Assembly (NCBI GenBank): GCA_002269645.1
Contig: NIVC01003251.1
Coordinates: 45,098 to 109,097 of the forward strand
Source: Macrostomum lignano
Taxonomy: Eukaryota
Reading direction: 5' to 3'
Length of the DNA stretch: 64,000 nt
The position numbers and the translations under genes were made by a program. Below, in pieces: positions 98 through 62,123 of the stretch; positions within the stretch are counted from its first letter, which is position 1; each line of letters starts with the position of its first letter. Under the pieces are notes generated by a model, which did not search any database, was not told where the DNA came from, and saw only the letters and a program-made list of their open reading frames with translations.

Positions 98-2121
98 CAT
101 CAAGGAGACTTGGACAACAGATCGTCCTCGTCCCAGGCCGCTGGGGCTTGACTGGGAGATGGGAGTTGGTCGACGTCCATGGCCTCCTCACCCCCACCGG
201 CCACCCCAGCAGAGTCCTCAGGCTCCGATGACAGGATGGAGGAAGCTTCCTTACCTGCATCTTTACCTTCAGACCCCACCAGGGTGGCCGAGGAGAGCTC
301 GGATTCCGAAGACCCGGCCTCGTCCTCAACTCCTTCTCCGACTAGCAGGTTTGGTTCCCGGGGCTTGGCCGGAGCCGTTACCGCGGTCGCCGAACTGCTG
401 CTAGCAGAGGGGCGAGACGCAGCTTTGGCTTTGGGATCGGCTTGCGCCTTTCCTTGGGTCTTAGACTGCGCCCCGCTCTTGCCGGAGATGCCGGGGTTGG
501 CAGTAGCCTTCCCTTTGGCAGACTTTCCTCGGCGCATCTTGAGCTTGAGGGCATCCAGCTGGAAAGAGGATCCATTAGGGTACCGACTCGCCCAAGTGCT
601 GGAAAGGCCGAGGACAATTGAGTTGCCCGTCTCCCCCCTGCGGACTTGGCGGTGATACACCAGTCCACTAGCAGGGAGGTCGGGGTTCAGACGCAGTAGG
701 ACCCGGCGGATAACGTCTGGTCCAGCTGCGGTGCTCTTAGCAGGGACGAAAACCATAGGGTATCGTCTTTGGACGCTGGCCCTCGCGAAGAAAAAGAGCT
801 CCGCCAAGGTCAGCATCCAAGGAGACCGTCGGTAGCCGCTGGAGCAGCTGCCGAGCGTCCTCCTCGCTGCTAGGAGCAATAAGAACGAATGTGCTTCGCA
901 GCACCATCCGCTCAATGCCGATGGAGATTCCCTCCTCGACAGTCAGCTCAATCAGATAGGAGTCAACAGCACTCCACACTTTTTGAAGCTGATCAGTGGT
1001 CCAGTCCTGGTCGCGACCTTGGATGATCACTCCCGGGATTTTGGCCTTGGCCTTCGCCGCAAAGGTAGCTCCCGAAGGAACCTCCTTGTTGGCAGTGGCC
1101 ATTTGCTGCGCCGTGGTTTCGGCCTCAGCAGCCGCAGCAGCATCTCCAGGGAGCGCCGCCGCTGAACTACTGGAGCTTCCACCGGCCGGCCCGCCTGGTT
1201 GCCTTGGGACTCCAGTCGCTTCAGCATCCATGGTGGACGCCGCCGCTTTGGCCCCCGCAGCTCCCTGCTTGGCCTGCCTTTTGGCGCGTTGTTTAGCGCG
1301 TTTGCGCTCAAGCCGAGCCCGCTGAGCTTCATCGGATCTGCCAGATTTGGCCGGTCCTTTAGGCTCAGAGCTCGCGGTTCCCTTAGATCCACCAGCGGAG
1401 CTGGAAGGTCTTTGGGCATTTTGAGTTTGGTAGCTCTGGTCGGATCTGCCAGCAGAGCCAGCCGGTCCTTCCTTTGCCACAGTTGAATCAGTCGGTTGGG
1501 ATCTGCCAGCAGGGCCGGCCGGTCCTTCGGACTGAGGTTGGGGTTTAGAAGGGTCCCCGTCCCTAGAAAAAGCTTGGTTATCCATAGTCGGCTCGAAGGC
1601 CATGATAAAAGGTTGTTGGGCTACCCTCAAAGGGGCGCGGTACCCACCCGGCCGCTCCACCTGACCGGGCAGTAGGCCAATAGAACCCTCAAGGCTGGCC
1701 CGACACCAGGAGGGGGACCGCTTGCGACCGGACTACTCCCCGGCCTTCCAGCCCATCGGCACGGTCAACACCTTAGGCATTTGAGAGTACGTTGAGCAGT
1801 ACCACGGCCTGCAGGTTGGCGAGCCAGACCCGCATACCCAAATTCGGCCGAAGCCACTGGATAGGGTCGCCAGCGCCGGAGCCCAGTCTGTCCAGCAGCC
1901 CTAGGGTCTGCCTTGAACACACGCGGGGACGAGTACCCTGGGTCGACTTGCGAGACAGCGTGGGGGGGGGTCTGCGGCTGCCAGAGGCAAGTAGAGGGTG
2001 CAGACCTCCCACCGGCCTTGACCTGCCAAAGATAGGGGCAGGCGTGAAGCATCGCAGACCGTAGCCCATAGGCCTAGTCTGTCTCATACTTCACTGGCGT
2101 GCTGAATACACCTTCGCGTGC
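98..2121 (-). mobile_element. 5' part of a non-LTR retrotransposon (LOA/R1-like): structured 5' UTR plus gag-like ORF1, cut off just after the ORF2 start
   Basis: ORFs 737..1660 and 100..915 join by a frameshift near 750-800 into a low-complexity gag-like ORF1. The likely ATG is at about 1603 (MAFEPT), matching ATGGCC at 19914 in the second copy. 1690-2110 is homologous to 19995-20400, which is physically linked to RT, zinc-knuckle and tail fragments. The ORF1 stop overlaps an ATG (TGATG, 102-98). Confidence 0.75.
1836..2121 (-). ncRNA. Candidate HDV-like self-cleaving ribozyme, copy 1
   Basis: Minus strand: P1 GCACGCG (2121-2115) pairs with CGCGUGU (1925-1919), with a G.U first pair. P3 GGG/CCC encloses L3 UACUCGU (1935-1929). 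The GU after P1 (1918-1917) pairs with L3 AC. Candidate J4/2 CGAA (1846-1843) is followed by UUUGGGU, complementary to ACCCAGG, but that strand overlaps P3 by two G. Confidence 0.65.
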
Positions 2122-3151
2122 AACGTAGGTGTGAGTAAAGCGAATTTATAAATTTTTGTCAATGAAACAAATGTAGCTGGTATAAATTCGATTGACTCAC
2201 ACCATTAATTTCAGTTAGGATGGAGGTGAATGGGGGGAACCCTCAAAAAGTGACAGGTGCAGCCATTAATCATCAAATTTCAATACATTTTTTAAATGAG
2301 TTTTAACAATGCTAAGTAAAAAAATTAGCATGAAATCTCATAGAATTCACTTCATGGAAATCTCATGTGAGTTATCGCAAGCCAGCATACCAGATGGCCG
2401 ATTAATACCTTGACGTCTGGTGATTTGGTGGTATGGAAAAGAAAAAAACCATGAAAGAGAGAGCAATACTAATATGAAAGACAAAGGGTACAAAGGAGGT
2501 AATAAAAAAGAGGAAATGAAAGAATGGGAACGATAGGGAAGTGTTGTGATTTACAATGCTTGCGCAATGAATTGACCACTGACAATTAACTATTGACCTT
2601 ATTGAATGCGTGGGCGTATACTATACTCAGACTAGAATGTGTAGGTGATTGCGTATCGATTTGGCAATGCAACGTGCAAGTAGTTTCATCTCTATAAATA
2701 TATTGTGAGCGAGATGTGTATCTCTGAACTCAAAAGCTTCAATCAAAGAAACTCTCTGTGTTAATTAGAACACAACAGGAAGATTATAATCCCAACTGGC
2801 CATAGTGAGTACACAACAGAGGAAAGAGCTCATGTGCCGTCATACCAGTGCGAGGGCTGTCCGAGTACTGGATACTCAGAAGTCCCAGGTCGTTTCCCCT
2901 TGACTCATCAAATGATTCATTCCACCCCATCATTGCTTGTTCACCTTCGCGTTACTTCCTCAGGCTCTTCCTCACGTTTTAAACCTCGTATCTCCCAAAG
3001 CTATTTTGCTTCTTTCGCGTGACCTATTGCGCAACCCTCGGATTTTATAGGTCGTCTACGCACATGACGTCACTTGGCTGCCAAACGACGCCATTCAAGG
3101 AATGGTCAAGGCCACTTTGTTCTCATATCATGCCTGTGATTTTTTATTAAA

Positions 3152-9826: not shown

Positions 9827-12800
9827 TCAACGCCTCTCAACAAGTTGAATCAACCGATCCAACTTTGCTTCAACGTCGTTGATCTGCTTGCGTCGACGTT
9901 TTGACTGCAGCTTCAGGTTGACGAGCTTTGCTTCGATGCCGGTCGAGTCCGACCGCTTTGAAGTTGCCGCCGATCGAGTCCGGCCCAGCGAATCGATGCC
10001 TCGCTTTACAGCCGCGAAGTTGTTGTCGGCGCGAGCCTGCACTCCGTCCGGGTCGCTGTCGGCGTCCACAATCCCACGAGTCAGATATCTTCGACCGAAC
10101 CGTCGGAACTGCTTGGCTTGAAACTTCAGGAACTGGGTGTACACTTTCGGATAATCAGTCTGACTGTACCACCAGTTCTGCAAGGCAAGGGCCAACATTT
10201 AAGTTAAACAGGCTAAATGCATCTTAATTAATAGTGTGTGCTCAAACGTTCATTTAGTATGCAGCAGAGAGAAACAGAGAGCGGATAAACAATAGCTTTC
10301 AAATAGTTTAAAAAGCTCTTCTTACCTGTTTAAGAGCAATCCATAGTTTACATATTAGCTACAATAGAATCTTGCGCTGCTACGTATGCAGAGAAAATTT
10401 TGTATTACCACTTCAAAAGTCTCTTGCTTCTCTTGAAGATGACAATATCAGACACGCGTCTACTGGTTTGTGGAAAGTATATATCGGCAATGCAAAAAGC
10501 TTGCACGCGGCAGGTAAAGGAAGTATAGCATAGAATTTCTGCTCAGCCTAGCTAATGGGTGTATTTTAGCCTTAAGGCAAGCCAATTGAAGAAGTCTAGG
10601 TGTCAGAGACCCGTCCTGGCAACATCATCTGGGTTCGAGTTCACTTTTGACAGCGGAAAACAAAGTTGAGTTTGGAGGTGTTAGAGAGTGTTAAAGGATG
10701 AATATACATTTTAAATGCTTTAAAAAGCGACTGACACTTACCGTGCTCTTACTGTAATGCTCGACATTTTGTAGTGCATCGCGAAATGACCAGTAAATGT
10801 AGAAAAGTCCGACGAAAGTCGCATAAATCACATAGATTGGTGACGGGACGGCGCACATCCGGTTGCACTCAACCAGCATGTCGAAGTACATTCTTCTCCA
10901 GACTATCTTGGACTTGCTGGCAATTTTGCTCACTCTCAGGCTGAACAATGCAATCAGCAGATTAACCATGACGATGTTAACCAGCAGAAGGAATACAAAC
11001 ATGAAGCAGTTGTAGAACGCATCACTGCCTTGGTCATAGGCCATGGAGCCGATTTCATACCCAGTAAGGTTGGTACTGTTCACGCTATTAAATTTAATCT
11101 CGTCGAAATTTGTGAACATTAGCTTCAAGGGAAGCGTAAACACCTGGACAAGCGACAGCCAGTAGTTCGCTCCCGCTGGAACAGGGAACAGCAAGTGAAA
11201 GAAGAAAATCCCGAAGGAATATATCACAATCAGAATTATTGACAGAAACGGTAGCAGGTCCAGAAGTAGCAGTTGAACCAGCATCATAACCATGGGCCCC
11301 GTCTTCTCAAAGAATGTCAAAAGTGAAATCAGACGAATTCCCCAAATTAGGAAGCTGGCAGCTGTGAGCATTCTACCGGAGTAGTCTTTATAAAGCAGAA
11401 CGCCTAGAAAACCAACAAAAAAAGAGGCCGCACTGGCCAATTCTAGCCAAGAGAGTGCTCTGTTGGTGCTCGAGAAGGGCAGGGAAGACCTGAATATTAC
11501 ACGAAAAGCCAACTTGAAATGATTTGAAATTCCATAGACAGCGAAGGCTGACTTTGACTTAGCTGCAGGGCTGTCCCGGAGGGGACACAGCGGGAAGGCG
11601 CGGGCGCCCATTCCGCTAGTCCCTGAAGACAGCGAAGGCATACATCAAAACTTGATCGTAAATATACGTATTACTAGACAATGAATAAGCTTCATTCCGT
11701 ATCGGAATTCCAATACTAAATAAAGACAGCAAGATTAAAGCTAACACATCAGACGCGCAGTACGAATAAAACTTTGCACGTGGTGAAGCGGCTGGATATC
11801 TCTCTAGCCAAATAATACCGACACCACTCTTAACGTCTTCATCGTTGGGCAGCAGATCCCTAGTCAGACTGCTGTGCCGGTTCTTCCATTCCGTGTCGGC
11901 CAGCTTGGTCATGCACTCACTGACAAACAGCTCATCACAATCAGCTTCCAGCAGCAGTCGCACAGTTGTGCACGGCTCAATAGCATCCTTCTTAGTCTCG
12001 TCAAGCATGCCCGACGTCGGGTGCACACAGGTGAACTGCGGGCCGCTACTTTTTGGCTCCATCCGGCCACAAATATAGTCGAAGAGCAGTTGCTGCTCAT
12101 AGGCGCTGGCATTGCGAAACATTTCATCAAGAGCGTTGAATGCAATGCATTTGAGCTTCTGTCTCAGTTCCTTAATCTCCTCGCGCTGCTCAGGAATCTC
12201 CTTCAACTTTCGCTTGAGCTCAGTTAGTACTTTCAGGCATGTAGGAATTAGCTCGAACTGTCTCGTGAGCACTAGGTCCGGTATGATCTTGAATTTATTG
12301 AGAAACAACGCTGTCTCAATGATGGACATCTCTGTTGCCTGAGTAAGATTTTCAGGATGTAAAATCGATGCAGCCAAGTACTCAGTTTCCAGGCTGATGA
12401 AGCCCATGCTTATTGCACTACGCAGAATCTCAGGCGCGTCAAGTTCAATAGAAGTGACAAGAAGGTTTACACCTGAGAGTGCTCTCTGATGTTGCTTAGG
12501 GACACTCGCTGATACACTGACGGAGCTCAGAACTCTGTTGGCCGTCTCCCTATCAGGCAGATCCAATGCTCGCTTCGGCAAGTCCAGAAGTCTCAGCAGG
12601 TTTGTCTTTCTCCCGCCACTGCTCAGAAATGCTTTCTCAACTGCGCCATCCTTTCCACTGTTGCAGGCAAAGTCGATCGGTGTGAGTCCGTCATGGGTCG
12701 GTGAGGACAGCGACAAGCCCTTTTCAATGAGAAACTTGATGTTGCCCTCATGACCTGCTTGACACGCAAAGTGAAGACAAGAAGCTCCTCTGTGAGTTCC

Positions 12801-15155
12801 TGACGAGACTGTCAGTGACAGCAGTTGGGATGCTTCGATGCCAGATAAGCAGGCAAGTGGCTCAACAAAGTCTTTCAAGCGGTACCTGGTGGCAGCGAGA
12901 TGAACCGCATGCGTCCCACTTGAGCTGTGAAGCATTGCCTTGATCAGCTTTCAAACATTGTTGGTGTCCACGGCCGCTTCTAAAATTTGCTTCAACAAGT
13001 TCTCTCGAATTTTGCACACTTGGAGACAAGTCTTACCAATGCTGTTCTCAGTTCCCGGATTTACTCCGGCTTTGGCAATGAGCTTCAGCGATTTGATGAA
13101 GGCTTCTATGCCGCTAGTTGCCGTAGTGTTCATGAAGAGTGCGTGCATCAGGGTGTTGCCGTCAGCGTCAACGCGAGTCATTTCATCGCTTGTTTTGAAA
13201 GGCTCGAGTGCAGCCACGTTCCAGTTGAAGCTCGCATAGAAAAGCGGGTTTCTCCCTGATGCGTCCAAGGATTTCAAGGACTTATCGAGTTCGCCAGGGA
13301 AATTTTCCTTCAAGAAATTGTAAGACTTGACGTTCGCAAAAGCAAGGTGCACCACTGTTTGTTGTTTGTTATTTCGCCAGAAGATGCAGTCACTCGCGAG
13401 CTTCTTCACAGCGGCATCAGTGAAAGTGAGCATGCCCCGGGAGATAGCGAGATGCAATACTGTGTTGCCTGCGTCATCTGCGGCTTTGAGAACAGCAACC
13501 CTGGCAGCTGGTAGCAGCTCCAATAGAGTGGCCTCATCTTCACGGTGTGCCAAGCAATGCAGCACTGTCTGACCCAGTTTGTTCTGCTTCAACAGGCCTT
13601 CTGAGCCAGAAATCCTGAGTGCAGTGAGAAGTGCTTCTGAACAGTCTGTCCTATGGGCCATGTAGTGCATGCACGTGTTTCCAGAAGTGTCCTGCAAGCT
13701 GACGCATGCGGTATTCATTGCATTCAGCAGTCGCAACAGCACGCTTGGCTGGCAGTGCACCGACGCCAGATGTAATGCCGTCTCTGACTTGTTGTTTAAC
13801 CAGCAGGGGCATCTGAGATTTCTCAGCAGTGCTGCTTTATGCTTATCTAACATGGCGTTTTTCATAGCCTGCCTCTCAGCGTACTCAAGGACAGCTAACA
13901 TTGCGTTATCATTATTTTCGTTCATAGCGGCATAGTGCATCCACGTGTTTCCATCCCAATCAACCAGGCCAAACCTTTGGGCAACTTCCGGGTTTAAAGG
14001 CAACTCTGAAGACAACCTGAGCATTTGTTTTATGGTATCTACTCTGCAGTTTTGAAGCACCAGCTGCAACACCGATTGATTTTTGTTATTTTTCCACCGA
14101 AAACTCTTTGGAAAAAACTCAACAGCCCGAAGTACAGCCTCGTCTGCACCTCGCATGGCAGCATAGTGAATGCTGGAGTTTCCCTGTTGGTCTTTCGTTT
14201 TAAGATGCTTCGTGAGACAGCCACTGCGTGTGTGACCAATCTCTAATAAAGCCGGTATTCTCTCTGGACTGAACTTCTCAATCGACATGTGCAGCATTGT
14301 TTGTCCAGCGGAGTTCGGAGCAAACAGATCACTGCAACTGGTGGGTGTTGAGTCAACCAGCAGACTCAGCACGTCCTGGTGCTCTATGTTTGAGGCGGCA
14401 TAGTGCGCTATGGTGTTTCTGCGTGACGTCTTCAGCATCTTGAGCAGTTTGGAAACCATTTCACCACCATCTATGATGTCAGAGAGGATTTTTCTCACGG
14501 TGCCAGTAGAATGGCAACCAAGCGAGAGGTGGAGCGGCGTGACCGCCTTGTAGTCGTCTTTGAGCAGAGCTTGAGACCCGAACAGCCCCAGAATGTGCAG
14601 CAATGTGGACTCTCCATCGGTGCTCATCGCTGCATAGTGAGCTGCAGTTCGTCTGCTTTTATCGTGAACATGCTGACCCGAAAAGTCATTGGGTATTTGC
14701 ATGAGCAGTTCATTGGCTTCTGAGAATCTACCAACTTTTGTCAAACGAATAATTCTTCTCATAAAGTCCTTCTCTGCACACTCTTTGAGCACCTCTACGG
14801 CCTTGTGCGAAGTGTCTGTTGAATCTTGATAGTCGCTTGAAGAATCCTCACGACAATTCATAGTAGTGCCATCTTCTTGGTCCAACTCGGCTTCTGAGTC
14901 GCTACTGTCGCAGTCCAGTTGAAGGACGGCATCGGATTTTACATGCAGACCAGATTGATGAAGTTCAGTGGGTTTCGGCAGCTGTGCTTCATCATCTTCA
15001 CCGTCTCGCTGATGGAACTGGGCTGACGACTTTTTTTCAGCGAGGCTTTGCTCGGTAGAGCTGCCGCCAACGAAGCTCGCATCGACGTCTACAATTGTCA
15101 ACTCCCTGACGTTGTGGCTGCCGTCACTGCTTCCACTTGATATCTCATCCGTCAT
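9827..15155 (-). pseudogene. Ankyrin-repeat TRP-type cation channel, disrupted; exons 15155-10742 and 10177-9827
   Basis: About 18 ankyrin-like T..H.A motifs, then six TM segments with GPMVMML..DL..F (S4-S5), LVNIVMVNLLIALFS (S6), a TRP-box-like W plus VPSP, and a coiled-coil last exon joined by a phase-0 GTAAGT/CAG intron. Lesions: in-frame TGA at 12951-12953 and a 91-bp frameshifting insertion at 11536-11639. Removing the insertion gives one frame of about 1557 codons. Confidence 0.85.
11549..11626 (-). mobile_element. 78-bp 5'-truncated LINE 3' end with 13-bp target-site duplication
   Basis: AGACAGCGAAGGC at 11536-11548 and 11627-11639. The insert ends CTGCAGCTAAGTCAAAGTCA, like the LINE tails at 19070 and 49600. 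Confidence 0.9.
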
Positions 15156-17926: not shown

Positions 17927-19069
17927 GTTGTAACAAGGACCACTTTAGTAGAAGGGCAGTGGTCCTTGTGTTGTACATGTGTGCATGAAAGCTATTTGGC
18001 ATCATTTGCACTCGCATATGTTCTTCAGCATTATTTTAGAGGTTACATACAGTAACTGCGTGGCTTACTTAATGCTCATAAACTTTTTTTTAAGTCACAG
18101 AACTATACCTGTTGCGAACCGAGTCAAATTAGCTCGTAATAAGCACCCCGGGCTACAAAGCTTGCGACTAAACTAATCCCCATGCACAAAGCCACACGCT
18201 AGCAACCAGAACCGTAAGCACGTATAAAACGGTAGTTTATTTCAAAACCATTATACGTAATCTTACCGGAAGTTTATCGTAGTTCTTGTACTCGTAAAGT
18301 GAGTTAAATGCCCCCTAAAAAGAGTGATTGAAAGAGAAATCTTGCGCACCGACTGTTGTGCTTTTGTTTTTGCTCCAAAAGCTAGCTAAGGACAAGTGTG
18401 ATATGCAGTGCTTATTTTATGCAGATGCACTGAATGCAGAATATCAGATAGCTTCTATTTTTACTGCCAAACTGAAACTGCAGCGATGCAGTGTTTTGGG
18501 GTTGCAGTGCTGATGGAGAGAGATTTTTTTAGTTGCATAGTGCAGCCCTTCATCAGTAAAGCATCAACCTGTTTATCTTATTATGCTCAACTGCATGAAT
18601 GAGTCCTTTTTTCATTGCATTGTACACTTCTAGATTCGAAAAACACTTGATACGCCGTACGCGCAGCAGTACAGCAGTTCTGTACTCTCCACTTTCAGAT
18701 GCATTCTCACGGCTCAATTCCATGCTTATCATAGTAGCGGAGGAATAAATTGGTATAAGATTATTTAGTGTGGATTCGCACTTGCGCAATAAACCTGTCT
18801 GAATTTCTACAAGAGCCAAAGTGCAACAGAGTGGCACGGCTGTGGCGACTGGCAAGCTTAAACATTTATTCGACAACCTTCTGTACTTTAGCAGAGAGGT
18901 GCCCAACCTTCTAGTTTGTTCGGAGATTATGCTACGACCTCCCGATGACCCGGTAGTCTTTGATGAAGATGATTCTAGTTAGCCGGAATGAGTTTTGTAT
19001 ACCAGGTGTTTTGAGATCTCCATTATTCACCATAATGTCAAAATACCGCATACTGTCATCATGTGCCTG

Positions 19070-20409
19070 CTTGACTTACTTGACTTAGCTGCAGGTCGAT
19101 TCGAAGACGCAGCGGGGAGGCGAGCGTCGACTATTCCGCTAATCCCTGAAGAGCCCGCATAGACTAGGGCGCGGGGTCGGTCCGATCTGTAGCGTTGTCT
19201 TCGGTGGGGAAGACGGAGGCTCGTTAGGTAGCCCGGAGGAACTGGATGAGCCGTGGAATATTCTCGGGTCGGCAGGCGTCGTCCAGGAACGGGTTGGGCC
19301 CGAGGTAGTGGAGCCGGTCTCGGTTGAAGGCCGGACAGTAGCAGTTGAAGGGCTTAGCATCTTCATTTTCAGGGTTGCAAAAGGGGCAGAGTTCGCGTCG
19401 GCGGACGCCTCGGAGGAAACAGTGCCTGGTAAAGCAACCGTGACCTGTGAAGGTCATAATGAGAACGCGGATATCTTTTTCGATTTTAAGTAAAGTTACG
19501 TAACGGATCTCACCCGTAAGTAACGGCCGGTCGGACCATTGCGGGGTAGATCCACCAGAGCCGCTTCGGGGTGAGATCCAAGGTGGTGCCGACGGCTCTG
19601 TGCAACAGCGCCAGAATTTCGAGGGCTTTTTGGTTTTGGCCTGAACGTGGATAGACCAGCTCAGCCTGTGGTCCAGCGGACGCAGCAGCAGTCCGCTTCT
19701 CATGCCGCTTGAGGTTGCGGCGGATGTTGCGCTGGCACCGAGCCTCGGCCGTGCGCGATCGGCTAGACTGGTGGCCAGAGCGATCGGCGTCACTGGCTGG
19801 CCCGGTTGGACCAGGTTGAGCGTTGGAGCTACCGTTGGTAGCTGCCGGAGCGGCTAATCCCGGTGGGCCAGTGGCGACCGGGTCAGTTTCATTAAAATTG
19901 GTTTTTGTGGCCATAGCTGAAAAGCGGGGGAGGGCTACTCGTTACGCGAGTTGAGTACCCAACTGGCCGACACCTCAAGCCAGCCGGTTTGAAAAAAGGG
20001 GACCGCTAGCGACCGGACTACTCCCCAGCCTTACAGCATATCGGCAAGGTCAACACCTTAGGCATTTGAGGGTACGTGAAGCAGTACCACGGCCTGCAGG
20101 CTGGCGAGCCAGACCCGCATATCCAAGTTTGGCCGAAGCCACTGGATGGGTCACCAGCGTCGGAGCCCAGTCTGTCCAGCAGCCCTAGGGTCTGCCTTGA
20201 ACACTCACTGGGACGTGCACCCACCCCTGGGTCGACTTGCGAGACAGCGTGGCGGAGTCTGTGGCTGCCAGAGGCAAATAGATGGTGCAGACTTCCCACC
20301 AGCCTAAACCTGCTGGAGAAAGGGGCAGGCGTGAAGCATCGGAGACCTTTAGCCCATAGGCGTAGTCTGTCTCATACTTAACTGGCATGCTGAATGCGCT
20401 TTCGTAAGC
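19070..20409 (-). mobile_element. Internally deleted LINE derivative keeping both ends (1.34 kb)
   Basis: 5' UTR homologous to 1690-2110, ORF1 N-terminus (19914), RT C-terminal piece (LTPKRLWWIYPAMVRPAVTYG), zinc knuckle (LCPFC..ED..F.C.CPAF), 3' UTR and TAAGTCAAG tandem tail. Flanks CATGTGCCTG (19060-19069) and CATGATCCTG (20410-20419) may be a degenerate TSD. Confidence 0.85.
20121..20409 (-). ncRNA. Candidate HDV-like self-cleaving ribozyme, copy 2
   Basis: P1 GCUUAC(G) (20409-20403) pairs with (A)GUGAGU (20209-20203). P3 GGG/CCC encloses L3 UGCACGU (20219-20213), followed by GU (20202-20201). Candidate J4/2 CAAA (20131-20128) is followed by CUUGGAU, which pairs with ACCCAGG with one mismatch. 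G1 coincides with the inferred element end. Confidence 0.65.
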
Positions 20410-21214
20410 CATGATCCTGCACGAAAAAGTTATTTTCTGAGTATGGATTCCCCAGCAAGATTCCTACCGACCAAGGAAAGCATTGACGCGAGGGCTTTAC
20501 CACAAAACACCGTAAAAATAAAGCTAAAACGGCCAGGGGGATAACTTTAAAAAGCAGTGGAATAATTTTTACATCGTATTAATTATTTCACAAGAAAATA
20601 CCGGATGCCAATAGACAATACTAAATCAGCCGAACTGCAATCAACTCAAACAAGCTCCCTCAACAATCCTGCTTAGATCCAAGCTGGGAAGCTCCAAAAC
20701 AGATCGCTCAAAGCAGTTTACGAAATTTCTTCAGAAGATTGCTGAAAGTTCATGCAAGTTTTGTTCCTGTTTTGGGATTTCACGAACTCGAAAGGATTTT
20801 ATTCTACTAGTTCATCGGTGGAATCATCTGAACGTGTTTCAAGGAGAGTACGGTACATCCGGAAGAGCCATCAGGACTTCGTAGAGTGTTGTACTGGATG
20901 GTTGCCTCTTGGTGTCTTTGAGGTCTTGAGGCCCGAGGAATACGACGAGACTGAGGCCCAGATTCAAGGTTGGCTCGATGAAACATGCTCCTCGCGCCGA
21001 TTCGTTTATCTTATCAGAGCTGGCAGAGATAGGTGTCACCCGGATAGGTTAGTACTCAAATCTAAGGGCAAAACATACGTCAATCGTAATCACCTCGTCT
21101 TAAATCTCAATCTTTTTTGCCGAAATGGTCAACGCGATTTTTCTATTGTATTTGGTCAAGGGAGGAGTTTGAGACACCGTTGTGAGTAAGGACCCAGCCT
21201 AACTTGTAGTTAAC

Positions 21215-35210: not shown

Positions 35211-38200
35211 TCAGAAGGCCTGGTGCATGCCGGCAGCCAATGAAGGCATTCGCAGGCCCATATCTCGGGCCAGTTGCAGTTGCACATCGGCAGCCTCCCG
35301 CAGCGCCCACAGGTGAGCCAACTCAGCCTCAGTCTTAGTCAGAGCGATAGCCCGATCAAACAGGCCGATGGCGGCGTCCAAGTTGCCACGCTGGACTTCG
35401 ATAGTGGCCAAAGTTTCTAGGGCGAATTCACAGCGAGGTTCCACTTCTAGGGCGCGTTGGATTAGGGCTACACCGCCTTCGGTGTCGTTGTGAGCCTGCA
35501 GTCTCAGCAGGCCCTGGTGTACGTACGCTGTGCCCGAATCCGGCTCGAGCTGTGATTATGGGGAAGCATGGAGCAGTCAGATGCTTCAACAATGCTCAGT
35601 TCTTGCTGAAACTCATGAGCACGCTCACACAAGGTGTACAACAGCCCTGATACAGAGACTCTGCCTTAGGGAGGCCGACCCAGCAACTGGGGATCTATCT
35701 GGGAGGCTGGTGACCCAGCAACTGGGGATCTATCTGGGAGGCTGGTGACCAGTGGTGTGATTGGAAAGTTTGCCACATTTCGCGCCGACTGAAAATTTTC
35801 GCGCCATGCCAATGATATTCTACTGACAGCCAAATAAGTCAATTGATGACACTTTTGAAGATGCGTCTGCATACATGCGCAACTGCTGGCCGACCTGGCC
35901 GATCTGGCCACTGTAAATTGTGGTGGACCAGGGGTAAGTCGCAAAAATGCCCACCCCAAAGAAGACATAGTACTAATTAGATGACGAGACATTTAGCCCT
36001 TATAAGAGAGTCACAGTTACTCCTGCCGTTTACCCAAAATTGCGTTAATGTTGCCCTAGGGTTTCTTTTGCAGGTAAGTCGCATTTTTGGTCAAAAAGTA
36101 AGTCGCATGGCCAGTGTAAATCAGGGGGTTGCGCATGTATGTGCGTCTGGCTACCAATTAGCATGTCTCTCAAGTCCCAGCCGTGTCCCGCCTGAACTTC
36201 TTGTTGGCGATGCTGGGTGGAATCTTTGAATCTGGGCAAATGGCCATCAGATCCTCGGCAAAGGTCCTCTTTTGATTCGAAGCTGCGATTCTTCAGTGCA
36301 ATCCTGACAACACATCTGATCTCTGCCACCCTTGCAGGCGTAGCAGCCACATCTTCAGTGTCACTTTGCTTCTTTGCGACCACGAAAGTCTCCACGAATC
36401 TCGAAATTCTCGAGATTAATCTCCTAAGCTATGACATTCTTGTATTTCATACTGTCTGACAAGAGAATAAGTGTAAAAAGCAGAAAATAAGAATGCAATT
36501 TTCGCGCCCATGGTTCCACAAAATTTCGCGCCAGACCCCCAGGATTCGCGCATTCGCGCCATTTTCGCGCCTGGCGCGAATTCGCGCCTGAATCACACCA
36601 CTGCTGGTGACCCAGCAACTGGGGATCTATCTGGGAGGCTGGTGACCCAGCAACTGGGGATCTATCTGGGAGGCTGGTGACCCAGCAACAGAGGATCTGG
36701 GAGGCTGGTGACCCAGCAGCTGAGGATCTGGGAGTCTGGTGACCCAGCAACTGGGGATTTGAGAGTCTGGTTACCCAGCAACTGAGGAATTTGGGAGTCT
36801 GGTGACCCAGCTGTCCCAGCAACTGGGGATTTGGGAGTCTGGTGACCCAGCAAACTGGAGATCTATCTGGGAGACTGTTGACCCAGCAACTGTGGATCTG
36901 GAAGGCTGGTGACCCAGCAACTGGGGATTTGGGAGTCTGGTGACCCAGCAACTGGGGATTTGGGAGTCTGGTGACCCAGCAACTGAGGATCTGGGAGGCT
37001 GGTGACCCAGCAACTGGGGATCTGGGAGTCTGGTGACCCAGCAACTGGGGATCTGGGATTCTGGTGACCCAGCAACTGGTGATCTGGGAGACTGGTGACC
37101 CAGCAACTGGTGATCTGGGAGACTGGTGACCCAGCAACTGGTGATCTGGGAGACTGGTGACCCAGCAACTGGTGATCTGGGAGACTGGTGACCCAGCAAC
37201 TGGGGATCTGGGAGGCTGGTGACCCAGTAACTGAGGATCTGGGAGGCTGGTGACCCAGCAACTGGGGATCTGGGAGGCTGGTGACCCAGCAACTGTGGAT
37301 CTGGGACACAGTGTATAAAACGGCCCTGATACAGCCACTCTGCCTCAGGGAGGCCGGCCCTCATGGCTGTGAATTTCACGAAAAACAGGCCAGTCAGTAA
37401 GAGTCGGTACAAACCTCAGTAACCCGTTTAAACGCTTTCTCCGCCTCGTCAAACTGTTGCGTCTCTAGCAGGGCCTGGGCGTAGAGCGAATGCGCTTCAC
37501 CGCAACGGCGATGCTTCTCGGTTAAACGGCGAAGCTGGTCGAGTGCGTTGGCGCCCGACCCGGTTCGGTGGGAGGCGTAGGCGCGCTGCACCGCGGGAAT
37601 TGGATTGGCTGGGGCACCCTGCGGCGAGTTTTTAGGGAAGAATTTTTAGTATGTATGATTTTTTGGTAAAGTGCAAGGATTCATATATTGGGAAATCGGG
37701 ATGTAAAATGGGGATTTCGATAATGGGGAATGGGGATCTAAACGCGGATTCCGATGGTGGAGAATGGGGTTTCTAGCAAGGTCTAGCGAGAGTTCCAAGC
37801 TTATTGTTGCACTTTTTATGATCTGTCGGCTGTCTGCTTTCTGGCAATGTTTTGTTTAAATGCGGATTTTGATGGTGGAGAATAGGGATCTAAAATGGGG
37901 ACTTCGATGGTGGAGAATAGGGATCTAAAATGGGGACTTCGATGGTGGAGAATAGGGATCTAAAATGGGGACTTCGATGGTGGAGAATAGGGATCTAAAA
38001 TGGGGACTTCGATGGTGGAGAATAGGGATCTAAAATGGGGACTTCGATGGTGGAGAATAGGGATCTAAAATGGGGACTTCGATGGTGGAGAATAGGGATC
38101 TAAAATGGGGACTTCGATGGTGGAGAATAGGGATCTAAAATGGGGACTTCGATGGTGAAGAATGGGGATCTAAAATGGGGATTTCGATGGTGGAGAATAG

Positions 38201-41200
38201 GGATCTAAAATGGGGATTTCGATGGTGGAGAATAGGGATCTAAAATGGGGATTTCGATGGTGGAGAATAGGGATCTAAAATGGGGATTTTGATGGTGGGG
38301 AAGGGGGATCTAAAAAGGGGACTTCGATGGTGGGGAATCGGGATCTCTAAAATGGGGATTTCGATGGTGGGGAGTTGGGATTCAAATTTGGGATTTTGAT
38401 GGTGGGGAATCGGCAGTTGAAGAGGCGAGCCTAATATTCAAAGAAGGAAAAAAAACCTAAACAGTCAAATACAAACTAACCTCGCAAGCTTTAGTAAGAT
38501 GCACCAAAGCTTCGTCCAGCCGGTCGGTGAGCAGCAGCATCTGGCCCCGATGATGATGAGCGTCAGGATGATCCGGGCACAGCTGCAGCGCTCGATCGAA
38601 ATGGCCCAGCACGCTATCAGTTAGCACATCAGTTTGGCCTGGCATCGCCGCCTGCATAGCAAGGGACGCCAGCTTAATGAGAGCGTTGGCCCTGACGGAC
38701 CGGTCAACGTCATTGGAGTTGGCCAGGCTCTTCAACGTGGGCTCGGCTGACAGGGGCTGGCCGGACAGCAGCTGCAGGGTGGCCAGTAGCAGGCGGCAGA
38801 GATCTCTGCGATACGGAGTGAGATAGGATTGCTTCTCGGCTGCCTGTTGTTCCTGTTGCTGCTCCTGCGGCTGCGGCTCGTCACCGGATTCACCTGCAGC
38901 TTGGCTTGCCTCAGCTGATGCTGTTGGCGAGGGCGTCTGCGCGGAGCCTGCGATGGAAATAATGGTTAATATGGTGGCCTAGCAGCTGGGGATCCGGGAG
39001 GCTGGTGACCCAGCAACTGGGGATCCGGGAGGCTGATGATCCAGCAACTGGGGATCTGGGAGGCTGGTGACCCAGTAACTGAGGATCTGAGAGGCTGGTG
39101 ACCCAGCAACTGGTGATCTGAGAGGCTGGTGACCCAGCAACTGGGGATCCGGGAGGCTGATGATCCAGCAACTGGGGATCTGGGAGGCTGGTGACCCAGT
39201 AACTGAGGATCTGAGAGGCTGGTGACCCAGCAACTGGTGATCTGAGAGGCTGGTGACCCAGCAACTGGGGATCCGGGAGACTGGTGACCCAGAAACTGGG
39301 GATCCGGGAGGCGGATGATCCAGCAACTGGGGATCTAGGAGGCTGGTGACCAAGCAACTGGGGATCTGAGAGGCTGGTGACCCAGCAACTGGGGATCCGG
39401 GAGGCTGATGATCCAGCAACTGGGGATCCGGGAGGCTGATGATCCAGCAACTGGGGATCCGGGAGGCTGATGATCCAGCAACTGGGGATCCGGGAGGCTG
39501 ATGATCCAGCAATTGTGGATCTGGGAGGCTGATGACCCAGCAACTGGGGATCTGGGAGGCTGGTGACCCAGCAACTGGGGATCTGAGAGGCTGGTGACCT
39601 AGCAACTGGGGATCTGGGAGGCTGATGACCCAGAAACTGGGGATCTGAGAGGCTGATGACCCAGCAACTGGCGATCCGGGAGGCTGGTGACCCAGCAACT
39701 GGGGATCTGAGAGGCTGGTGACCCAGCAACTGGGGATCCGGGAGGTTGATGACCCAGAAACTGGGGATCCGGGAGACTGGTGACCCAGAAACTGGGGATC
39801 CGGGAGGCTGATGACCCAGCAACTGGGGATCTGGGAGGCTGGCCCAGCAACTAAAGATCTGAGAGGCTGATGACCAAGCAACTGGGGATCTGGGAGGCTG
39901 GTGACCCAGCAACTGGGGATCTGAGAGGCTGGTGACCCAGCAACTGGGGATCTGAGAGGCTGATGACCCAGCAACTGGGGATCCGGGAGGATGGTGACCC
40001 AGAAACTGGGGATCTGAAAGGCTGATGACCCAGCAACTGGGGATCCGGGAGGCTGGCCCAGCAACTGAAGATCTGGAAGAGAATCTGTGCGAACATGTAA
40101 AAACCAGATTGCTAAGAATTAGCGGCACTAATTACAGCCTCAGCAACCGTACCGTTAGAGTGCACCGGAGCTTTCAACGCCTCCTCGCACAGGCCAATCA
40201 GCTGATCGAATTTGCCATCGCTCAGAGCCTGCAGAGCGGCACTGAACGGGTCGGAGCCGATGGGCTCTCGCTGCACAGGGTCCTCGGAGAACGACATGAA
40301 AAAAGAGCGCAGAAACGCCTTGCTAGGCAACGAGGGAACAATGCGACTGGCGGATTCTTTAGCTAATTGACGACCGCGACTTTTTAGAACCTGAAATATA
40401 GATGGAAGGTGAGACCCTACATGTGTGAGGTTAGGAAAGGTCGAAAGTTCATATTTCAGTATTAAGGTCACAGGATCAAAGGTTATAAACACACACTAAG
40501 ACCAAGGTCACAGGGTCAAAGGTCATAAACACACACTAAGGCCAAGGTCACAGGGTCAAAGGTTATAAATACACGCTAAAGCCAAGGTCACAGGGTCAAA
40601 GGTTATAAACACACCCTAAGGCCAAGGTCACAGGGTAAAGGTTATAAACACACCCTAAGGCCAAGGTCACAGGGCCAAAGGTTATAAACATACACTAAGG
40701 CCAAGGTCACAGGGTCAAAGGTTTCAAGCACAATAAGGCCAAGGTCACAGGGTCAAAGGTTATAAACACACACTAAGGCCAAGGTTACAGGGTCAAAGGT
40801 TATAAACACACACTAAGGCCAAGGTCACAGGGTCAAAGGTTATAAACACACACTAAGGCCAAGGTCACAGGGTCAAAGGTTATAAACATACACTAAGGCC
40901 AAGGTCACAGGGTCAAAGGTTGCAAGCACAATAAGGCCAAGGTCACAGGGTCAAAGGTTATAAACACACCCTAAGGCCAAGGTCACAGGGTCAAAGGTTG
41001 CAAACATACACACTAAGGCCAAGGTCACGGTCAAAGGTTATAAACACACCCTAAGGCCAAGGTCACAGGGTCAAAGGTTGCAAACACACCCTAAGGCCAA
41101 GGTCACAGGGTCAAAGGTTGCAAACATACACACTAAGGCCAAGGTCACAGGGTCAAAGGTTACCTGCTCAGCCCTAGTCAAGCTGTCCGAGTTGCTGAAG

Positions 41201-51390: not shown

Positions 51391-62123
<10,733 letters not shown>

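What the first reader, a model, noticed from the sequence alone, without database searches (positions are those of the whole stretch)
1836..2121. Candidate HDV-like self-cleaving ribozyme at the 5' end of a LINE, with covarying helices in two copies
Seen: on the minus strand both LINE 5' ends begin with a G-led 7-mer that pairs about 195 nt downstream. Copy 1 has GCACGCG/CGCGUGU and copy 2 (20409) has GCUUACG/AGUGAGU. The sequences differ but pairing is kept (7/7 and 6/7), with a G.U first pair. In both, the partner strand follows GGG-L3-CCC, with L3 UACUCGU or UGCACGU keeping the U20, C22 and G25 positions, and the next GU pairs with L3 (AC or GC). Downstream, C(G/A)AA precedes a strand complementary to ACCCAGG. 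Known: this is the nested double-pseudoknot layout of HDV/CPEB3 ribozymes, which process the 5' ends of R2, RTE, L1Tc and baggins elements and tolerate a long J1/2. Inference: this family cleaves itself out of host transcripts. I do not know whether this family's ribozyme has been described. Caveat: the P2-P3 junction is 2 G short in copy 1 and 3 nt long in copy 2.
Basis: partly seen in the sequence, partly recalled or inferred. Interest (0 to 1): 0.88.

Follow-up and report, generated by a model that had tools for sequence, protein, structure and literature searches.

The report
Probable self-cutting RNA heading a LINE
The first ~290 bases of a flatworm (Macrostomum) LINE retrotransposon can fold like the hepatitis-delta-type self-cutting RNAs that other LINEs use to trim their own 5' ends: a new example of a known trick, well supported by sequence analysis but not tested at the bench.

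Summary
On the minus strand, two copies of a ~410-nt 5' module (starting at G2121 and G20409) have a G-led 7-mer. It pairs ~195 nt downstream, right after a GGG-7 nt-CCC hairpin and right before GU. A C(G/A)AA motif plus a strand complementary to ACCCAGG follows. Only P1 truly covaries: two pairs changed on both sides, one wobble change, one break. It is the only one of 480 candidate helices to do so. The two P1 neighbourhoods are the least conserved parts of the module. A target-site duplication next to an independently confirmed 3' end puts copy 2's 5' end at this G (±1 nt). A generic HDV-like descriptor hits only these two loci in 128 kb. The element is a real LINE of Macrostomum lignano or a close relative; relatives of its C-terminal domain have APE-RT-RNase H proteins. 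Weak points: P2, P3 and P4 do not covary; the P2-P3 junction length differs in every copy; J1.1/4 is 10 nt; competing helices exist; there is no Rfam hit; cleavage is untested. Verdict: probably an HDV-like 5'-processing ribozyme with a long structured J1/2, as in silkmoth R2. It is a new member of a known kind, of moderate interest.

The parts
2115..2121 (-). Copy 1, P1 5' strand GCACGCG. The predicted cleavage site is 5' of G2121 (RNA nt 1-7).
   Evidence: Pairs 7/7 with 1919-1925. Homology with copy 2 starts here.
1944..2114 (-). Copy 1, J1/2 peripheral domain (nt 8-178).
   Evidence: Folded alone, it forms a closed multibranch domain in both copies. The closing stems are 11-13/170-172 and 18-21/163-166. 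One compensatory pair lies in the internal helix 116/153.
1936..1943 (-). Copy 1, P2 5' strand ACCCA (nt 179-183) followed by P3 5' strand GGG (nt 184-186). The first two G could instead extend P2.
1926..1935 (-). Copy 1, L3 UACUCGU (nt 187-193) and P3 3' strand CCC (nt 194-196).
   Evidence: L3 positions 1, 3, 5, 6 and 7 are identical in copy 2. Only positions 2 and 4 differ.
1917..1925 (-). Copy 1, P1 3' strand CGCGUGU (nt 197-203) and P1.1 GU (nt 204-205).
   Evidence: The same amino-acid-level sequence occurs in two further M. lignano copies (P0002, P0032).
1848..1916 (-). Copy 1, J1.1/4 (nt 206-215) and the P4 domain. The main stem is 221-231/261-271, with 216-217/273-274 at its base.
   Evidence: Local MFE and suboptimal folds. 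Nt 211-240 are 100% identical between the copies.
1836..1847 (-). Copy 1, J4/2 with candidate catalytic C276 (window 1846) in CGAA, then UU, then P2 3' strand UGGGU (nt 282-286).
   Evidence: A third copy (P0002) back-translates to C-G/U-N-A followed by CYUGNGU. That fits CUUGGGU, a 7/7 complement of ACCCAGG.
1712..1835 (-). Copy 1, rest of the shared 5' module (nt 287 to about 410). It includes the 3' strand of a competing helix (nt 291-300, which pairs with 209-218).
   Evidence: Identity with copy 2 is about 0.9 up to nt ~390, falls to 0.70 over nt 391-420, and is lost after nt ~420. The competing helix appears in constrained folds.
740..1603 (-). Copy 1, ORF1 (ATG at 1603). It is frameshifted into the 100-915 frame, and the element runs off the window start.
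   Evidence: UniRef M. lignano protein P0001 reads through both frames.
20121..20409 (-). Copy 2 ribozyme candidate (RNA nt 1-289).
- P1: 20403-20409 with 20203-20209 (6/7).
- P2 5' strand: 20226-20232.
- Bulge GGU: 20223-20225.
- P3/L3/P3': 20210-20222.
- P1.1: 20201-20202.
- P4: 20133-20190.
- Candidate catalytic C: 20131.
- P2 3' strand: 20121-20127, with a C x A mismatch.
19071..20409 (-). Copy 2, the whole element. It is a 1.34-kb internally deleted LINE derivative that keeps the 5' module, an ORF1 start (ATG 19914), pieces of the ORF2 C-terminus, the 3'UTR and the terminal ...CTGCAGCTAAGTCAAGTAAGTCAA.
   Evidence: The C-terminal domain matches APE-RT-RNase H proteins. The same 3' terminus occurs in environmental contigs L015-L018.
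20410..20420 (-). Copy 2, 5' copy of the target-site duplication, GCAGGATCATG.
   Evidence: Matches 9/11 with 19060-19070. Random 11-mer pairs reach this at 3.6e-4.
19060..19070 (-). Copy 2, 3' copy of the target-site duplication, GCAGGCACATG. It lies immediately after the element's conserved 3' terminus.

Best explanation
The first ~290 nt of this LINE family's RNA form an HDV-like (nested double-pseudoknot) self-cleaving ribozyme.

Proposed mechanism:
- The element is transcribed as part of a longer read-through or host transcript.
- Nt 1-7 pair with the 7 nt that follow the P3/L3 hairpin (P1).
- The 171-nt J1/2 folds on its own into a closed domain that brings P1 and P2 together.
- P2 (ACCCA(GG) with (CU)UGGGU), P1.1 and P4 complete the fold.
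- The C of the C(G/A)AA junction (window C1846 / C20131) catalyses cleavage 5' of G1.
- The product is an element RNA that begins exactly at G2121/G20409 with a 5'-OH, and this RNA is then reverse-transcribed.

Shown: the complementarities, the P1 covariation, the conservation pattern of the core, the 5' boundary and the LINE identity.

Inferred: folding into the pseudoknot, catalysis, co-transcription with upstream sequence, and any role in translation.

Copy 2 is probably impaired. It has a P1 top mismatch, a P2 mismatch, a 3-nt bulge, and a fold about 12 kcal/mol above its MFE. Copy 1 may be competent.
For: 1. P1 is 7/7 in copy 1 and 6/7 in copy 2. The changes are A-U to U-A, G-C to A-U and C-G to U.G. 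It is the only helix of 480 with two double changes, with p about 0.005 by column shuffling.
2. Nt 1-30 and 181-210, which hold the two P1 strands, are the least conserved blocks inside an otherwise ~90% identical module, at 0.73 and 0.71. This is as expected if P1 and P1' co-evolve. Extensive compensatory change in P1 is reported for Drosophila R2 ribozymes (PMC3774820).
3. P1' is flanked exactly as in HDV-like ribozymes: a 3-bp G-C P3, a 7-nt L3 with U, C and G at positions 1, 3 and 6, no spacer, then G. That motif occurs at about 6e-5 per position.
4. Substitutions between the copies fall on L3 positions 2 and 4 and on J4/2 position 2. L3 U1/C3/C5/G6, the junction C and the two A are kept.
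5. The first P1 pair is G.U in both copies.
6. A third copy, read through a chimeric UniProt gene model (P0002), has C-G/U-N-A followed by CYUGNGU, which fits CUUGGGU. That gives a 7/7 P2, so copy 2's mismatch and copy 1's U280 are private.
7. The descriptor hits only these loci in 128 kb against 0.41 expected. Only 9 of 5000 local shuffles hit, and none with P1 at nt 1.
8. A TSD next to a 3' terminus confirmed in four environmental contigs places copy 2's 5' end at G20409 (or G20410).
9. The internally deleted copy 2 keeps the 5' module. The module is also shared by two subfamilies whose sequences lose similarity after nt ~420, including the start of ORF1.
10. Long J1/2 loops and structured, activating J1/2 domains are documented (PMC3774820, PMC4908430).
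11. For copy 1, the nested part of the fold (-118.2) plus P2 (-5.8) lies within about 4 kcal/mol of the MFE of -128.1.
Against: - Only two DNA copies were available, so P2, P3 and P4 have no covariation support.
- The P2-P3 junction differs in each copy: GG in P0002, GGG in copy 1 and P0032, GGGGUGGG in copy 2. No copy has the canonical contiguous 7-bp P2 plus 3-bp P3 with a 4-nt J4/2.
- J1.1/4 is 10 nt, against 0-2 nt in R2 ribozymes (PMC3774820).
- Several helices compete with the fold: 13-18/184-189 (one compensatory change; excludes P3), 209-218/291-300, and a C(UUCG)G hairpin 267-276 that would sequester the candidate catalytic C.
- The best-conserved stretch is P4 and the region downstream of it, not the catalytic core.
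- No HDV-family Rfam hit appears even at E<=10.
- MFE z-scores of -0.9 and +0.7 show no unusual stability.
- The one distant relative with a 5'UTR (L001) has no descriptor or Rfam hit.
- My descriptor's slack was set after seeing the candidate.
- No biochemical data exist.
Confidence: 0.65

Rival explanations
1. This is a non-catalytic structured 5'UTR. The 5' terminus is clamped to nt ~184-203 by a long-range stem (P1 plus the extension 13-18/184-189) that closes a ~170-nt domain. The stem would serve RNA stability, ORF protein binding, translation or promoter function. The HDV-like details around it would be coincidence.
For: - P1 is the only helix with solid covariation.
- The extension GUAUUC/GGGUAC changes to GCAUUC/GGGUGC, one compensatory change with no break.
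- This fold (-119.5 in copy 1, -97.8 in copy 2) is at least as stable as the nested part of the HDV fold (-118.2, -92.0).
- P2 and P3 have no covariation, and their junction is irregular.
- The best-conserved part, nt 206-305, lies outside the catalytic core.
Against: - It does not explain why P1' is preceded by a P3/L3 hairpin with the right length and the U/C/G pattern, and followed by G. That motif occurs at about 6e-5 per position.
- It does not explain why C(G/A)AA plus a complement of the strand just upstream of P3 lies downstream.
- It does not explain why the substitutions avoid exactly the positions that matter in HDV-like cores.
- It does not explain why the first pair is G.U at the element's first nucleotide.
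Confidence: 0.2
2. This is a dead relic. The family (or the donor of its 5' module) once had an active HDV-like ribozyme. The current subfamilies, including both window copies, have lost activity and now depend on an internal promoter in the same module.
For: - Both copies are defective elements. Copy 1's ORF is frameshifted, and copy 2 is internally deleted with frameshifts.
- Every readable copy has a non-canonical P2-P3 junction.
- Copy 2's fold is energetically poor.
- Nt 206-305 are more conserved than the core, which hints at another function.
Against: - P1 and P1' have co-evolved between the two subfamilies, which requires selection for pairing after they split.
- The core positions and the junction C/A/A are intact in all readable copies.
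- ORF1 of another M. lignano copy (within P0001) is nearly identical at the protein level to copy 1's, differing at only a few residues, so the family is young.
Confidence: 0.12
3. This is a chance resemblance. The complementarities arise at random in a GC-rich repeat and have no function.
For: - Loose HDV-like descriptors do hit by chance. Shuffles give 0.41 hits per 128 kb.
- A full descriptor hit lies inside a kinase-like coding sequence of a GC-rich metagenome contig, L003.
- MFE z-scores are unremarkable.
Against: - P1 shows compensatory changes (p about 0.005 anywhere in the alignment, far lower at nt 1).
- No local shuffle out of 5000 puts P1 at nt 1.
- The 5' end is supported by a TSD.
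- The conservation pattern of the core matches the ribozyme model.
Confidence: 0.03

Closest known systems
R2 retrotransposon HDV-like ribozymes, especially the silkmoth R2 ribozymes (Eickbush, Burke & Eickbush 2013, PMC3774820)
   Same: - The ribozyme sits at the 5' end of a non-LTR element.
- P1' immediately follows P3/L3.
- J1/2 is very long: 216-498 nt in silkmoths, and P1-P1' separation runs from 23 to over 700 nt, against 171 nt here.
- P1 is the fast-evolving, compensating helix where cleavage is at the element's own 5' end.
- P2 can be as short as 5 bp and can carry mismatches.
- Internally deleted derivatives keep the ribozyme (PMC3414825).
   Different: - R2 is site-specific in 28S rDNA, has a restriction-like endonuclease, and is co-transcribed by Pol I. 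This element is dispersed, and relatives of its C-terminal domain are of the APE-RT-RNase H type.
- R2 J1/4 is 0-2 nt, against 10 nt here.
- Silkmoth R2 lacks P4, whereas here P4 is large and highly conserved.
- R2 activity has been shown in vitro; here it is untested.
drz-Agam-2 family of large HDV-like ribozymes (Webb et al. 2016, PMC4908430)
   Same: A structured J1/2 peripheral domain (P1.2) is closed near P1 and P2 by short linkers. Here the linkers are 3 nt and 6 nt around the closing stems 11-13/170-172 and 18-21/163-166.
   Different: - Agam-2 has a single P1.2 helix and an extended 12-bp P2. Here J1/2 is a 171-nt multibranch domain and P2 is only 5-7 bp.
- The 'pinch' effect is unproven here.
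L1Tc (ingi clade) and baggins (LOA clade) 5' HDV-like ribozymes (PMC3185411, PMC4035085; baggins and RTE from Ruminski et al. 2011, which I could not read here)
   Same: These are dispersed APE-type LINEs whose RNA starts at the ribozyme cleavage site. To my knowledge they belong to the RNase H-bearing lineages of non-LTR elements, as the relatives of this element do.
   Different: - L1Tc's ribozyme is compact (first 77 nt) and doubles as an internal promoter. Here the fold spans ~290 nt.
- There is no sequence homology.
- The clade of the Macrostomum element was not resolved.
Twister-variant ribozymes of Schistosoma mansoni non-LTR retrotransposons (PMC8501958)
   Same: A flatworm LINE uses a small self-cleaving ribozyme in retrotransposition. 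That paper states that none of the 17 known S. mansoni non-LTR elements had been linked to a ribozyme before.
   Different: It is a different ribozyme class (twister). No twister or hammerhead match occurs in either copy at E<=10.
Mammalian CPEB3 intronic ribozyme and the hepatitis delta virus ribozymes (the founding members)
   Different: Those are compact, about 68-85 nt, with a short J1/2 and contiguous P2-P3. Here there is a 171-nt J1/2, a roughly 60-nt P4 domain preceded by a 10-nt J1.1/4, and an irregular P2-P3 junction.

Membership tests
HDV-like self-cleaving ribozymes | Nested double-pseudoknot order: P1 - J1/2 - P2 - P3 - L3 - P3' - P1' - P1.1 - P4 - J4/2 - P2'. | tested here: met
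   All complementary segments are present in this order in both copies. A generic descriptor finds only these two loci in 128 kb. Formation of the pseudoknot itself is not testable with nested-fold programs.
HDV-like self-cleaving ribozymes | P1 of 6-7 bp that starts at the cleavage-site G with a G.U wobble, with P1' directly after P3'. | tested here: met
   7/7 and 6/7 pairs, G.U first pair in both copies, no spacer. Two compensatory double changes.
HDV-like self-cleaving ribozymes | A 3-bp P3 closing a 7-8-nt L3 with the conserved U, C and G positions. | tested here: met
   GGG/CCC with UACUCGU or UGCACGU. Only L3 positions 2 and 4 differ. P3 itself never varies, so there is no covariation.
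HDV-like self-cleaving ribozymes | P1.1: the 1-2 nt after P1' pair with L3. | tested here: met
   G-C plus U-A in copy 1, and G-C plus U.G in copy 2: a one-sided compatible change.
HDV-like self-cleaving ribozymes | A catalytic C in J4/2 followed by two or three nt (the conserved A's), then P2' pairing with the strand contiguous with P3. P2 of at least 5 bp. | tested here: inconclusive
   C-G/A-A-A is present in all readable copies, and P2 is 5-7 bp. The register is irregular, however. Copy 1 needs a 6-nt J4/2 or shares two G between P2 and P3. Copy 2 has a 3-nt bulge and a C x A mismatch. P0002's copy has one G fewer still. There is no covariation in P2.
HDV-like self-cleaving ribozymes | P4 stacked under P1.1 with a short J1.1/4 (0-2 nt in R2; PMC3774820). 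| tested here: not met
   The best local folds leave 10 nt unpaired (nt 206-215) before P4. An alternative 4-bp base, 209-212/268-271, would give a 3-nt J1.1/4 but costs 2.8 kcal/mol. P4 is dispensable in some members, so this lowers the membership claim but does not exclude it.
HDV-like self-cleaving ribozymes | Match to curated covariance models (Rfam HDV, CPEB3 and drz families). | tested here: not met
   No hit at gathering score in the window and none at E<=10 in either 600-nt region. This was expected with a 171-nt insertion in J1/2 and a large P4, so it carries little diagnostic weight.
HDV-like self-cleaving ribozymes | Site-specific, divalent-ion-dependent self-scission giving 2',3'-cyclic phosphate and 5'-OH ends, abolished by mutating the junction C. 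| not testable with these tools
   Needs in vitro transcription and cleavage assays.
Non-LTR (LINE) retrotransposon, APE-RT-RNase H type | ORF2 with APE endonuclease, reverse transcriptase and RNase H, plus a C-terminal Cys/His domain. | tested here: met
   The window holds only the C-terminal domain (copy 2, 19227-19511) and ORF1 (copy 1). The C-terminal domain matches 109 representative proteins (best E=4e-67). Four of the seven tested carry RVT_1 and Exo_endo_phos_2, and RNase_H was found in four of the seven. Two of the seven are chimeric gene models with no LINE domain hit. Membership is therefore met through relatives. RT and APE of this very element lie outside the window or are deleted.
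Non-LTR (LINE) retrotransposon, APE-RT-RNase H type | A defined 3' terminus, a target-site duplication and variable 5' truncation or deletion. | tested here: met
   The 3' end ...CTGCAGCTAAGTCAAGTAAGTCAA is shared with L015-L018 from environmental assemblies. The 11-bp TSD matches 9/11.

The most novel reading that the evidence does not exclude
This is not just another HDV-like ribozyme but a regulated, modular variant. Three features would together make self-cleavage conditional, for example on co-transcriptional folding order or on ORF1 protein binding:
- two G's that can belong either to P2 or to P3;
- the competing 13-18/184-189 and 209-218/291-300 helices;
- the C(UUCG)G hairpin over the catalytic C.

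The whole 410-nt module would be a portable 5' cassette exchanged between LINE subfamilies that lose similarity after nt ~420, including the start of ORF1.
Probability: 0.15. Interest if true: 0.6.

Novelty: new member of a known kind. Interest (0 to 1): 0.4.

Why it matters
If active, this would extend HDV-like 5' processing to a free-living flatworm and to another LINE lineage whose relatives are of the APE-RT-RNase H type. I found no paper in the held library that reports HDV-like ribozymes in Platyhelminthes. The one flatworm case described uses twister variants instead (PMC8501958).

It would give a natural example of a large multibranch J1/2 domain with which to test the 'pinch' activation model.

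It would also explain how this abundant Macrostomum repeat gets a defined 5' end without a promoter of its own. That matters for annotating a genome in which LINE 5'UTR pieces are currently translated into chimeric gene models (P0001-P0004, P0032).

It does not open a new class of mechanism.

Tried and rejected
1. Rfam at gathering score on the window, and at E<=10 on both 600-nt regions, gave no ribozyme family of any class.
2. More copies in the window: BLASTN with words of 7 found only the two. An nhmmer run failed on a format option and was not repeated.
3. More copies elsewhere:
   - An exact 25-mer in viral contigs and a 23-mer in metagenome contigs gave nothing.
   - A degenerate core pattern in metagenome contigs gave 12 hits, all chance matches. 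Eleven lie in GC-rich (0.63-0.65) contigs, several visibly coding, and L009 (GC 0.49) also lacks any homology beyond the pattern. One is a full descriptor hit inside a kinase-like ORF.
4. An ORF1 protein search found only one UniRef chimera, with no DNA on record.
5. A stitched ORF2 C-terminus found nothing in the word-indexed search.
6. Concatenated pseudo-ORFs of the 5'UTR found P0002 and P0003. A local BLASTX against all fetched proteins added P0032 and P0004. These are useful only at the amino-acid level. None covers nt 1-7, so they add nothing on P1 covariation.
7. Contigs of relatives of the C-terminal domain (L001, L002, L015-L019) were examined:
   - Only L001 (34% identity) has a 5'UTR, and it shows no HDV-like descriptor or Rfam hit.
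   - L002 begins inside ORF1, and L015-L019 are 3' fragments.
   - P0015's contig could not be read.
8. Thermodynamics does not discriminate between the models.
9. I considered a local alternative P1 5' strand, CACGC at nt 160-164. It pairs 5 bp in copy 1, but it is invariant while P1' changes in copy 2, so I rejected it.
10. I considered an alternative P2'/J4/2 downstream of the 209-218/291-300 helix (CCAA + CCUG). It gives only 4 bp and loses an A in copy 2, so I rejected it.
Full report
**What is there**

On the minus strand, two sequences share a ~410-nt block. Copy 1 starts at G2121 and copy 2 at G20409. Identity is about 88% over 410 nt and is lost after nt ~420. No further copy is in the window.

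I number the RNA from the first G, so copy 1 nt i = window 2122-i and copy 2 nt i = 20410-i.

**Is it a LINE, and where does it begin?**

Copy 1:
- It continues into an ORF1 (ATG at 1603), which is frameshifted into a second frame.
- It then leaves the window.
- A UniRef Macrostomum lignano protein (P0001) reads through both frames at near identity. The window is therefore M. lignano or a very close relative, and the family is young.

Copy 2:
- It is only 1.34 kb long.
- It holds the 5' module, a different ORF1 start (ATG 19914), a post-RT fragment, a C-terminal Cys/His domain, a 3'UTR and the terminus ...CTGCAGCTAAGTCAAGTAAGTCAA.
- The C-terminal domain matches 109 representative proteins (best E=4e-67).
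- Of seven scanned with Pfam, four carry RVT_1 and Exo_endo_phos_2, and RNase_H was found in four. Two are chimeric gene models with no LINE domain hit.
- The same 3' terminus ends related elements on four environmental contigs, L015-L018, with unrelated sequence after it.
- Immediately after that terminus lies GCAGGCACATG. Immediately before G20409 lies GCAGGATCATG. They match 9/11, and random 11-mer pairs reach this at 3.6e-4.

So copy 2 is a 5'-complete insertion whose first base is G20409. It could be G20410, because that G may belong to either the duplication or the element. This is the position at which an HDV-like ribozyme with this P1 would cut.

**The helix that is really supported**

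P1 is nt 1-7 with 197-203 in copy 1 and with 201-207 in copy 2. It pairs 7/7 and 6/7, and the first pair is G.U in both. Between the copies:
- A-U becomes U-A;
- G-C becomes A-U;
- C-G becomes U.G;
- the top pair G-C is broken.

In an unbiased list of all 480 helices of at least 5 bp in copy 1, this is the only one with two double changes. Only 0.5% of column-shuffled alignments contain any such 7-bp helix.

The two blocks that hold the P1 strands (nt 1-30 and 181-210) are the least conserved parts of the module, at 0.73 and 0.71 against about 0.9 elsewhere. A nearer alternative 5' strand (CACGC, nt 160-164) does not change when P1' changes, so the distal strand is the partner.

**Why HDV-like rather than just a long-range stem**

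- P1' is preceded without a spacer by a 3-bp G-C helix closing a 7-nt loop with U, C and G at loop positions 1, 3 and 6. It is followed by G. In the 128 kb of both strands this composite motif occurs 8 times, the two copies included, or about 6e-5 per position.
- The two differences in L3 fall on positions 2 and 4. The single difference in C(G/A)AA falls on its second base. The loop U/C/C/G, the junction C and both A are unchanged.
- The GU after P1' can pair with L3 positions 3 and 2: G-C plus U-A in copy 1, and G-C plus U.G in copy 2.
- My own descriptor asks for P1 of at least 6/7 starting with G, J1/2 up to 260 nt, the P3/L3 core, the P1.1 G, C-N-A-A, and P2 of at least 5 bp with small slack. 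It hits only these two loci in the window.
- Dinucleotide shuffles of the window give 0.41 hits per 128 kb. Only 9 of 5000 shuffles of the 450-nt 5'UTR hit at all, and none with P1 at nt 1.
- I set the slack after seeing the candidate, so these numbers flatter it somewhat.

**The long J1/2**

- Folded alone, nt 8-178 gives the same closed multibranch domain in both copies.
- Its ends are brought together by stems 11-13/170-172 (U.G becomes C-G) and 18-21/163-166. This leaves 3-nt and 6-nt linkers to P1 and P2.
- The literature covers this. R2 ribozymes have J1/2 loops of 216-498 nt in silkmoths, and P1-P1' separations range from 23 to over 700 nt. Part of the silkmoth loop is required for activity (PMC3774820).

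**Extra copies read through proteins**

No DNA of other copies could be fetched. A search with concatenated pseudo-ORFs of the 5'UTR found chimeric UniProt gene models of M. lignano that translate parts of it. A local BLASTX added two more. Back-translation shows the following.
- P0002's copy (antisense frame) has P1' and L3 as in copy 1. Its J4/2 is C-G/U-N-A and its P2' is CYUGNGU, which fits CUUGGGU, a 7/7 complement of ACCCAGG.
- Copy 2's C x A mismatch and copy 1's U280 are therefore private changes.
- P0032 and P0003 (sense frame) agree with copy 1.
- P0004 links the copy-2-type 5'UTR to the copy-2-type ORF1, and P0032 links copy-1 type to copy-1 type.
- The two P1 versions therefore belong to two subfamilies.
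- None of these proteins covers nt 1-7.

**What does not fit**

1. P2, P3 and P4 never vary compensatorily.
2. The run of G between P2 and P3 is GG (P0002), GGG (copy 1, P0032) or GGGGUGGG (copy 2).
   - In the majority form, P2 is 5 bp with a 6-nt J4/2, or else P2 and P3 compete for two G.
   - In copy 2, everything is canonical except a 3-nt bulge between P2 and P3.
   - Homopolymer errors in the underlying assemblies may contribute. That is a conjecture.
3. The best P4 folds leave 10 nt (206-215) between P1.1 and P4. R2 ribozymes have 0-2 nt.
4. Competing helices exist:
   - 13-18/184-189 (one compensatory change; excludes P3);
   - 209-218/291-300 (7 Watson-Crick pairs, both strands invariant);
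   - a C(UUCG)G hairpin, 267-276, that would bury C276.
5. Nt 211-240 are 100% identical, and nt 206-305 about 95% identical. This is better than the core, which suggests a second function in this stretch.
6. Energetics are neutral for copy 1: MFE -128.1, against -118.2 for the nested part of the HDV fold plus -5.8 for P2. They are unfavourable for copy 2: -109.2 against -92.0 plus -5.5. MFE z-scores are -0.9 and +0.7.
7. No Rfam family matches. This is expected for such an expanded member.
8. The only relative with a readable 5'UTR, L001 (34% identity, unknown organism), shows nothing.

**Conclusion**

The most economical reading is that the family carries an HDV-like 5'-processing ribozyme with a large structured J1/2. 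P1 co-evolves with the element's 5' end. I give this 0.65.

The main rival is a non-catalytic 5' clamp (0.2). It explains P1 but none of the flanking detail.

Catalysis, co-transcription with upstream sequence and any role in translation are inferred from what is established for R2, L1Tc and related elements (PMC3774820, PMC3185411).

In kind this is known biology. The new points are the host (a free-living flatworm, whereas the described flatworm LINE ribozymes are twister variants; PMC8501958), the element lineage, and some unusual anatomy.

My comparison with the hepatitis delta virus ribozymes uses position names only. I did not fetch or write their sequences.

Noticed in passing
window 2128-2203: A ~76-nt inverted repeat (GGTGTGAGT...ACTCACACC) forms a long hairpin ending 6 nt upstream of copy 1's first base. 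It is absent upstream of copy 2, so it is flank and perhaps another small repeat. It produced weak miRNA-precursor-like Rfam hits (E 0.4-2).
   Followed up: partly
window 19071-20409 (minus): Copy 2 is a 1.34-kb internally deleted derivative that keeps exactly the 5' module and the 3' end. This resembles the R2-derived non-autonomous 'SIDE' elements (PMC3414825). Whether it is a propagating non-autonomous family could not be checked.
   Followed up: partly
window 1712-2121 and 19998-20409; ORF1 starts at 1603 and 19914: The 410-nt 5' module is ~88% identical between the two elements, but similarity is lost after nt ~420 (identity 0.37-0.58), including the starts of their ORF1s. P0032 and P0004 show that each module type stays with its own ORF1 type. 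This points to two subfamilies, or to modular exchange of the 5' end.
   Followed up: partly
L015 1630-1661, L016 2431-2509, L017 ~860-877, L018 ~820-844: Environmental metagenome contigs (JGI 3300022723 and 3300038379; ENA ERZ28573545 and ERZ27299524) carry related LINE 3' ends. They have an intact C-terminal Cys/His domain and the same terminal CTGCAG(C/T)TAAGTCAAG... motif. Relatives of this flatworm LINE are therefore present in environmental assemblies.
   Followed up: partly
proteins P0001-P0004, P0032 (UniProt, Macrostomum lignano): Several UniProt gene models of M. lignano are chimeras. They fuse host domains (UBC9-like, LIM, PGA_cap and others) to translated pieces of this LINE's ORF1 or even of its 5'UTR, in sense or antisense. 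These are annotation artefacts.
   Followed up: yes
window 1846-1855 (RNA nt 267-276) and the same in copy 2: GGC-UUCG-GCC can form a C(UUCG)G tetraloop hairpin that would pair the candidate catalytic C. It is invariant in both copies. It may be an inactive alternative conformer.
   Followed up: no
window 10691-15155 (minus): Three consecutive long ORFs (734, 439 and 316 aa) lie about 4 kb downstream of copy 2 on the same strand. The first two have ankyrin repeats, so this is probably a host gene.
   Followed up: no
window 36603-37306, 37858-38410, 38972-40076, 40464-41162, 52893-54073 and others: The window is dense in mini- and microsatellites. These include a 31-nt unit in two arrays, 35-nt and 40-nt units, and about 1.2 kb of (GACA)n. 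They account for the long spurious ORFs and the strong GC/AT skews there.
   Followed up: partly
L003 2965-2992: A complete HDV-like descriptor hit (core, 7/7 P1, 7-bp P2) lies inside a kinase-like coding sequence of a GC-rich metagenome contig. It is a reminder that loose descriptors hit by chance in large databases.
   Followed up: partly
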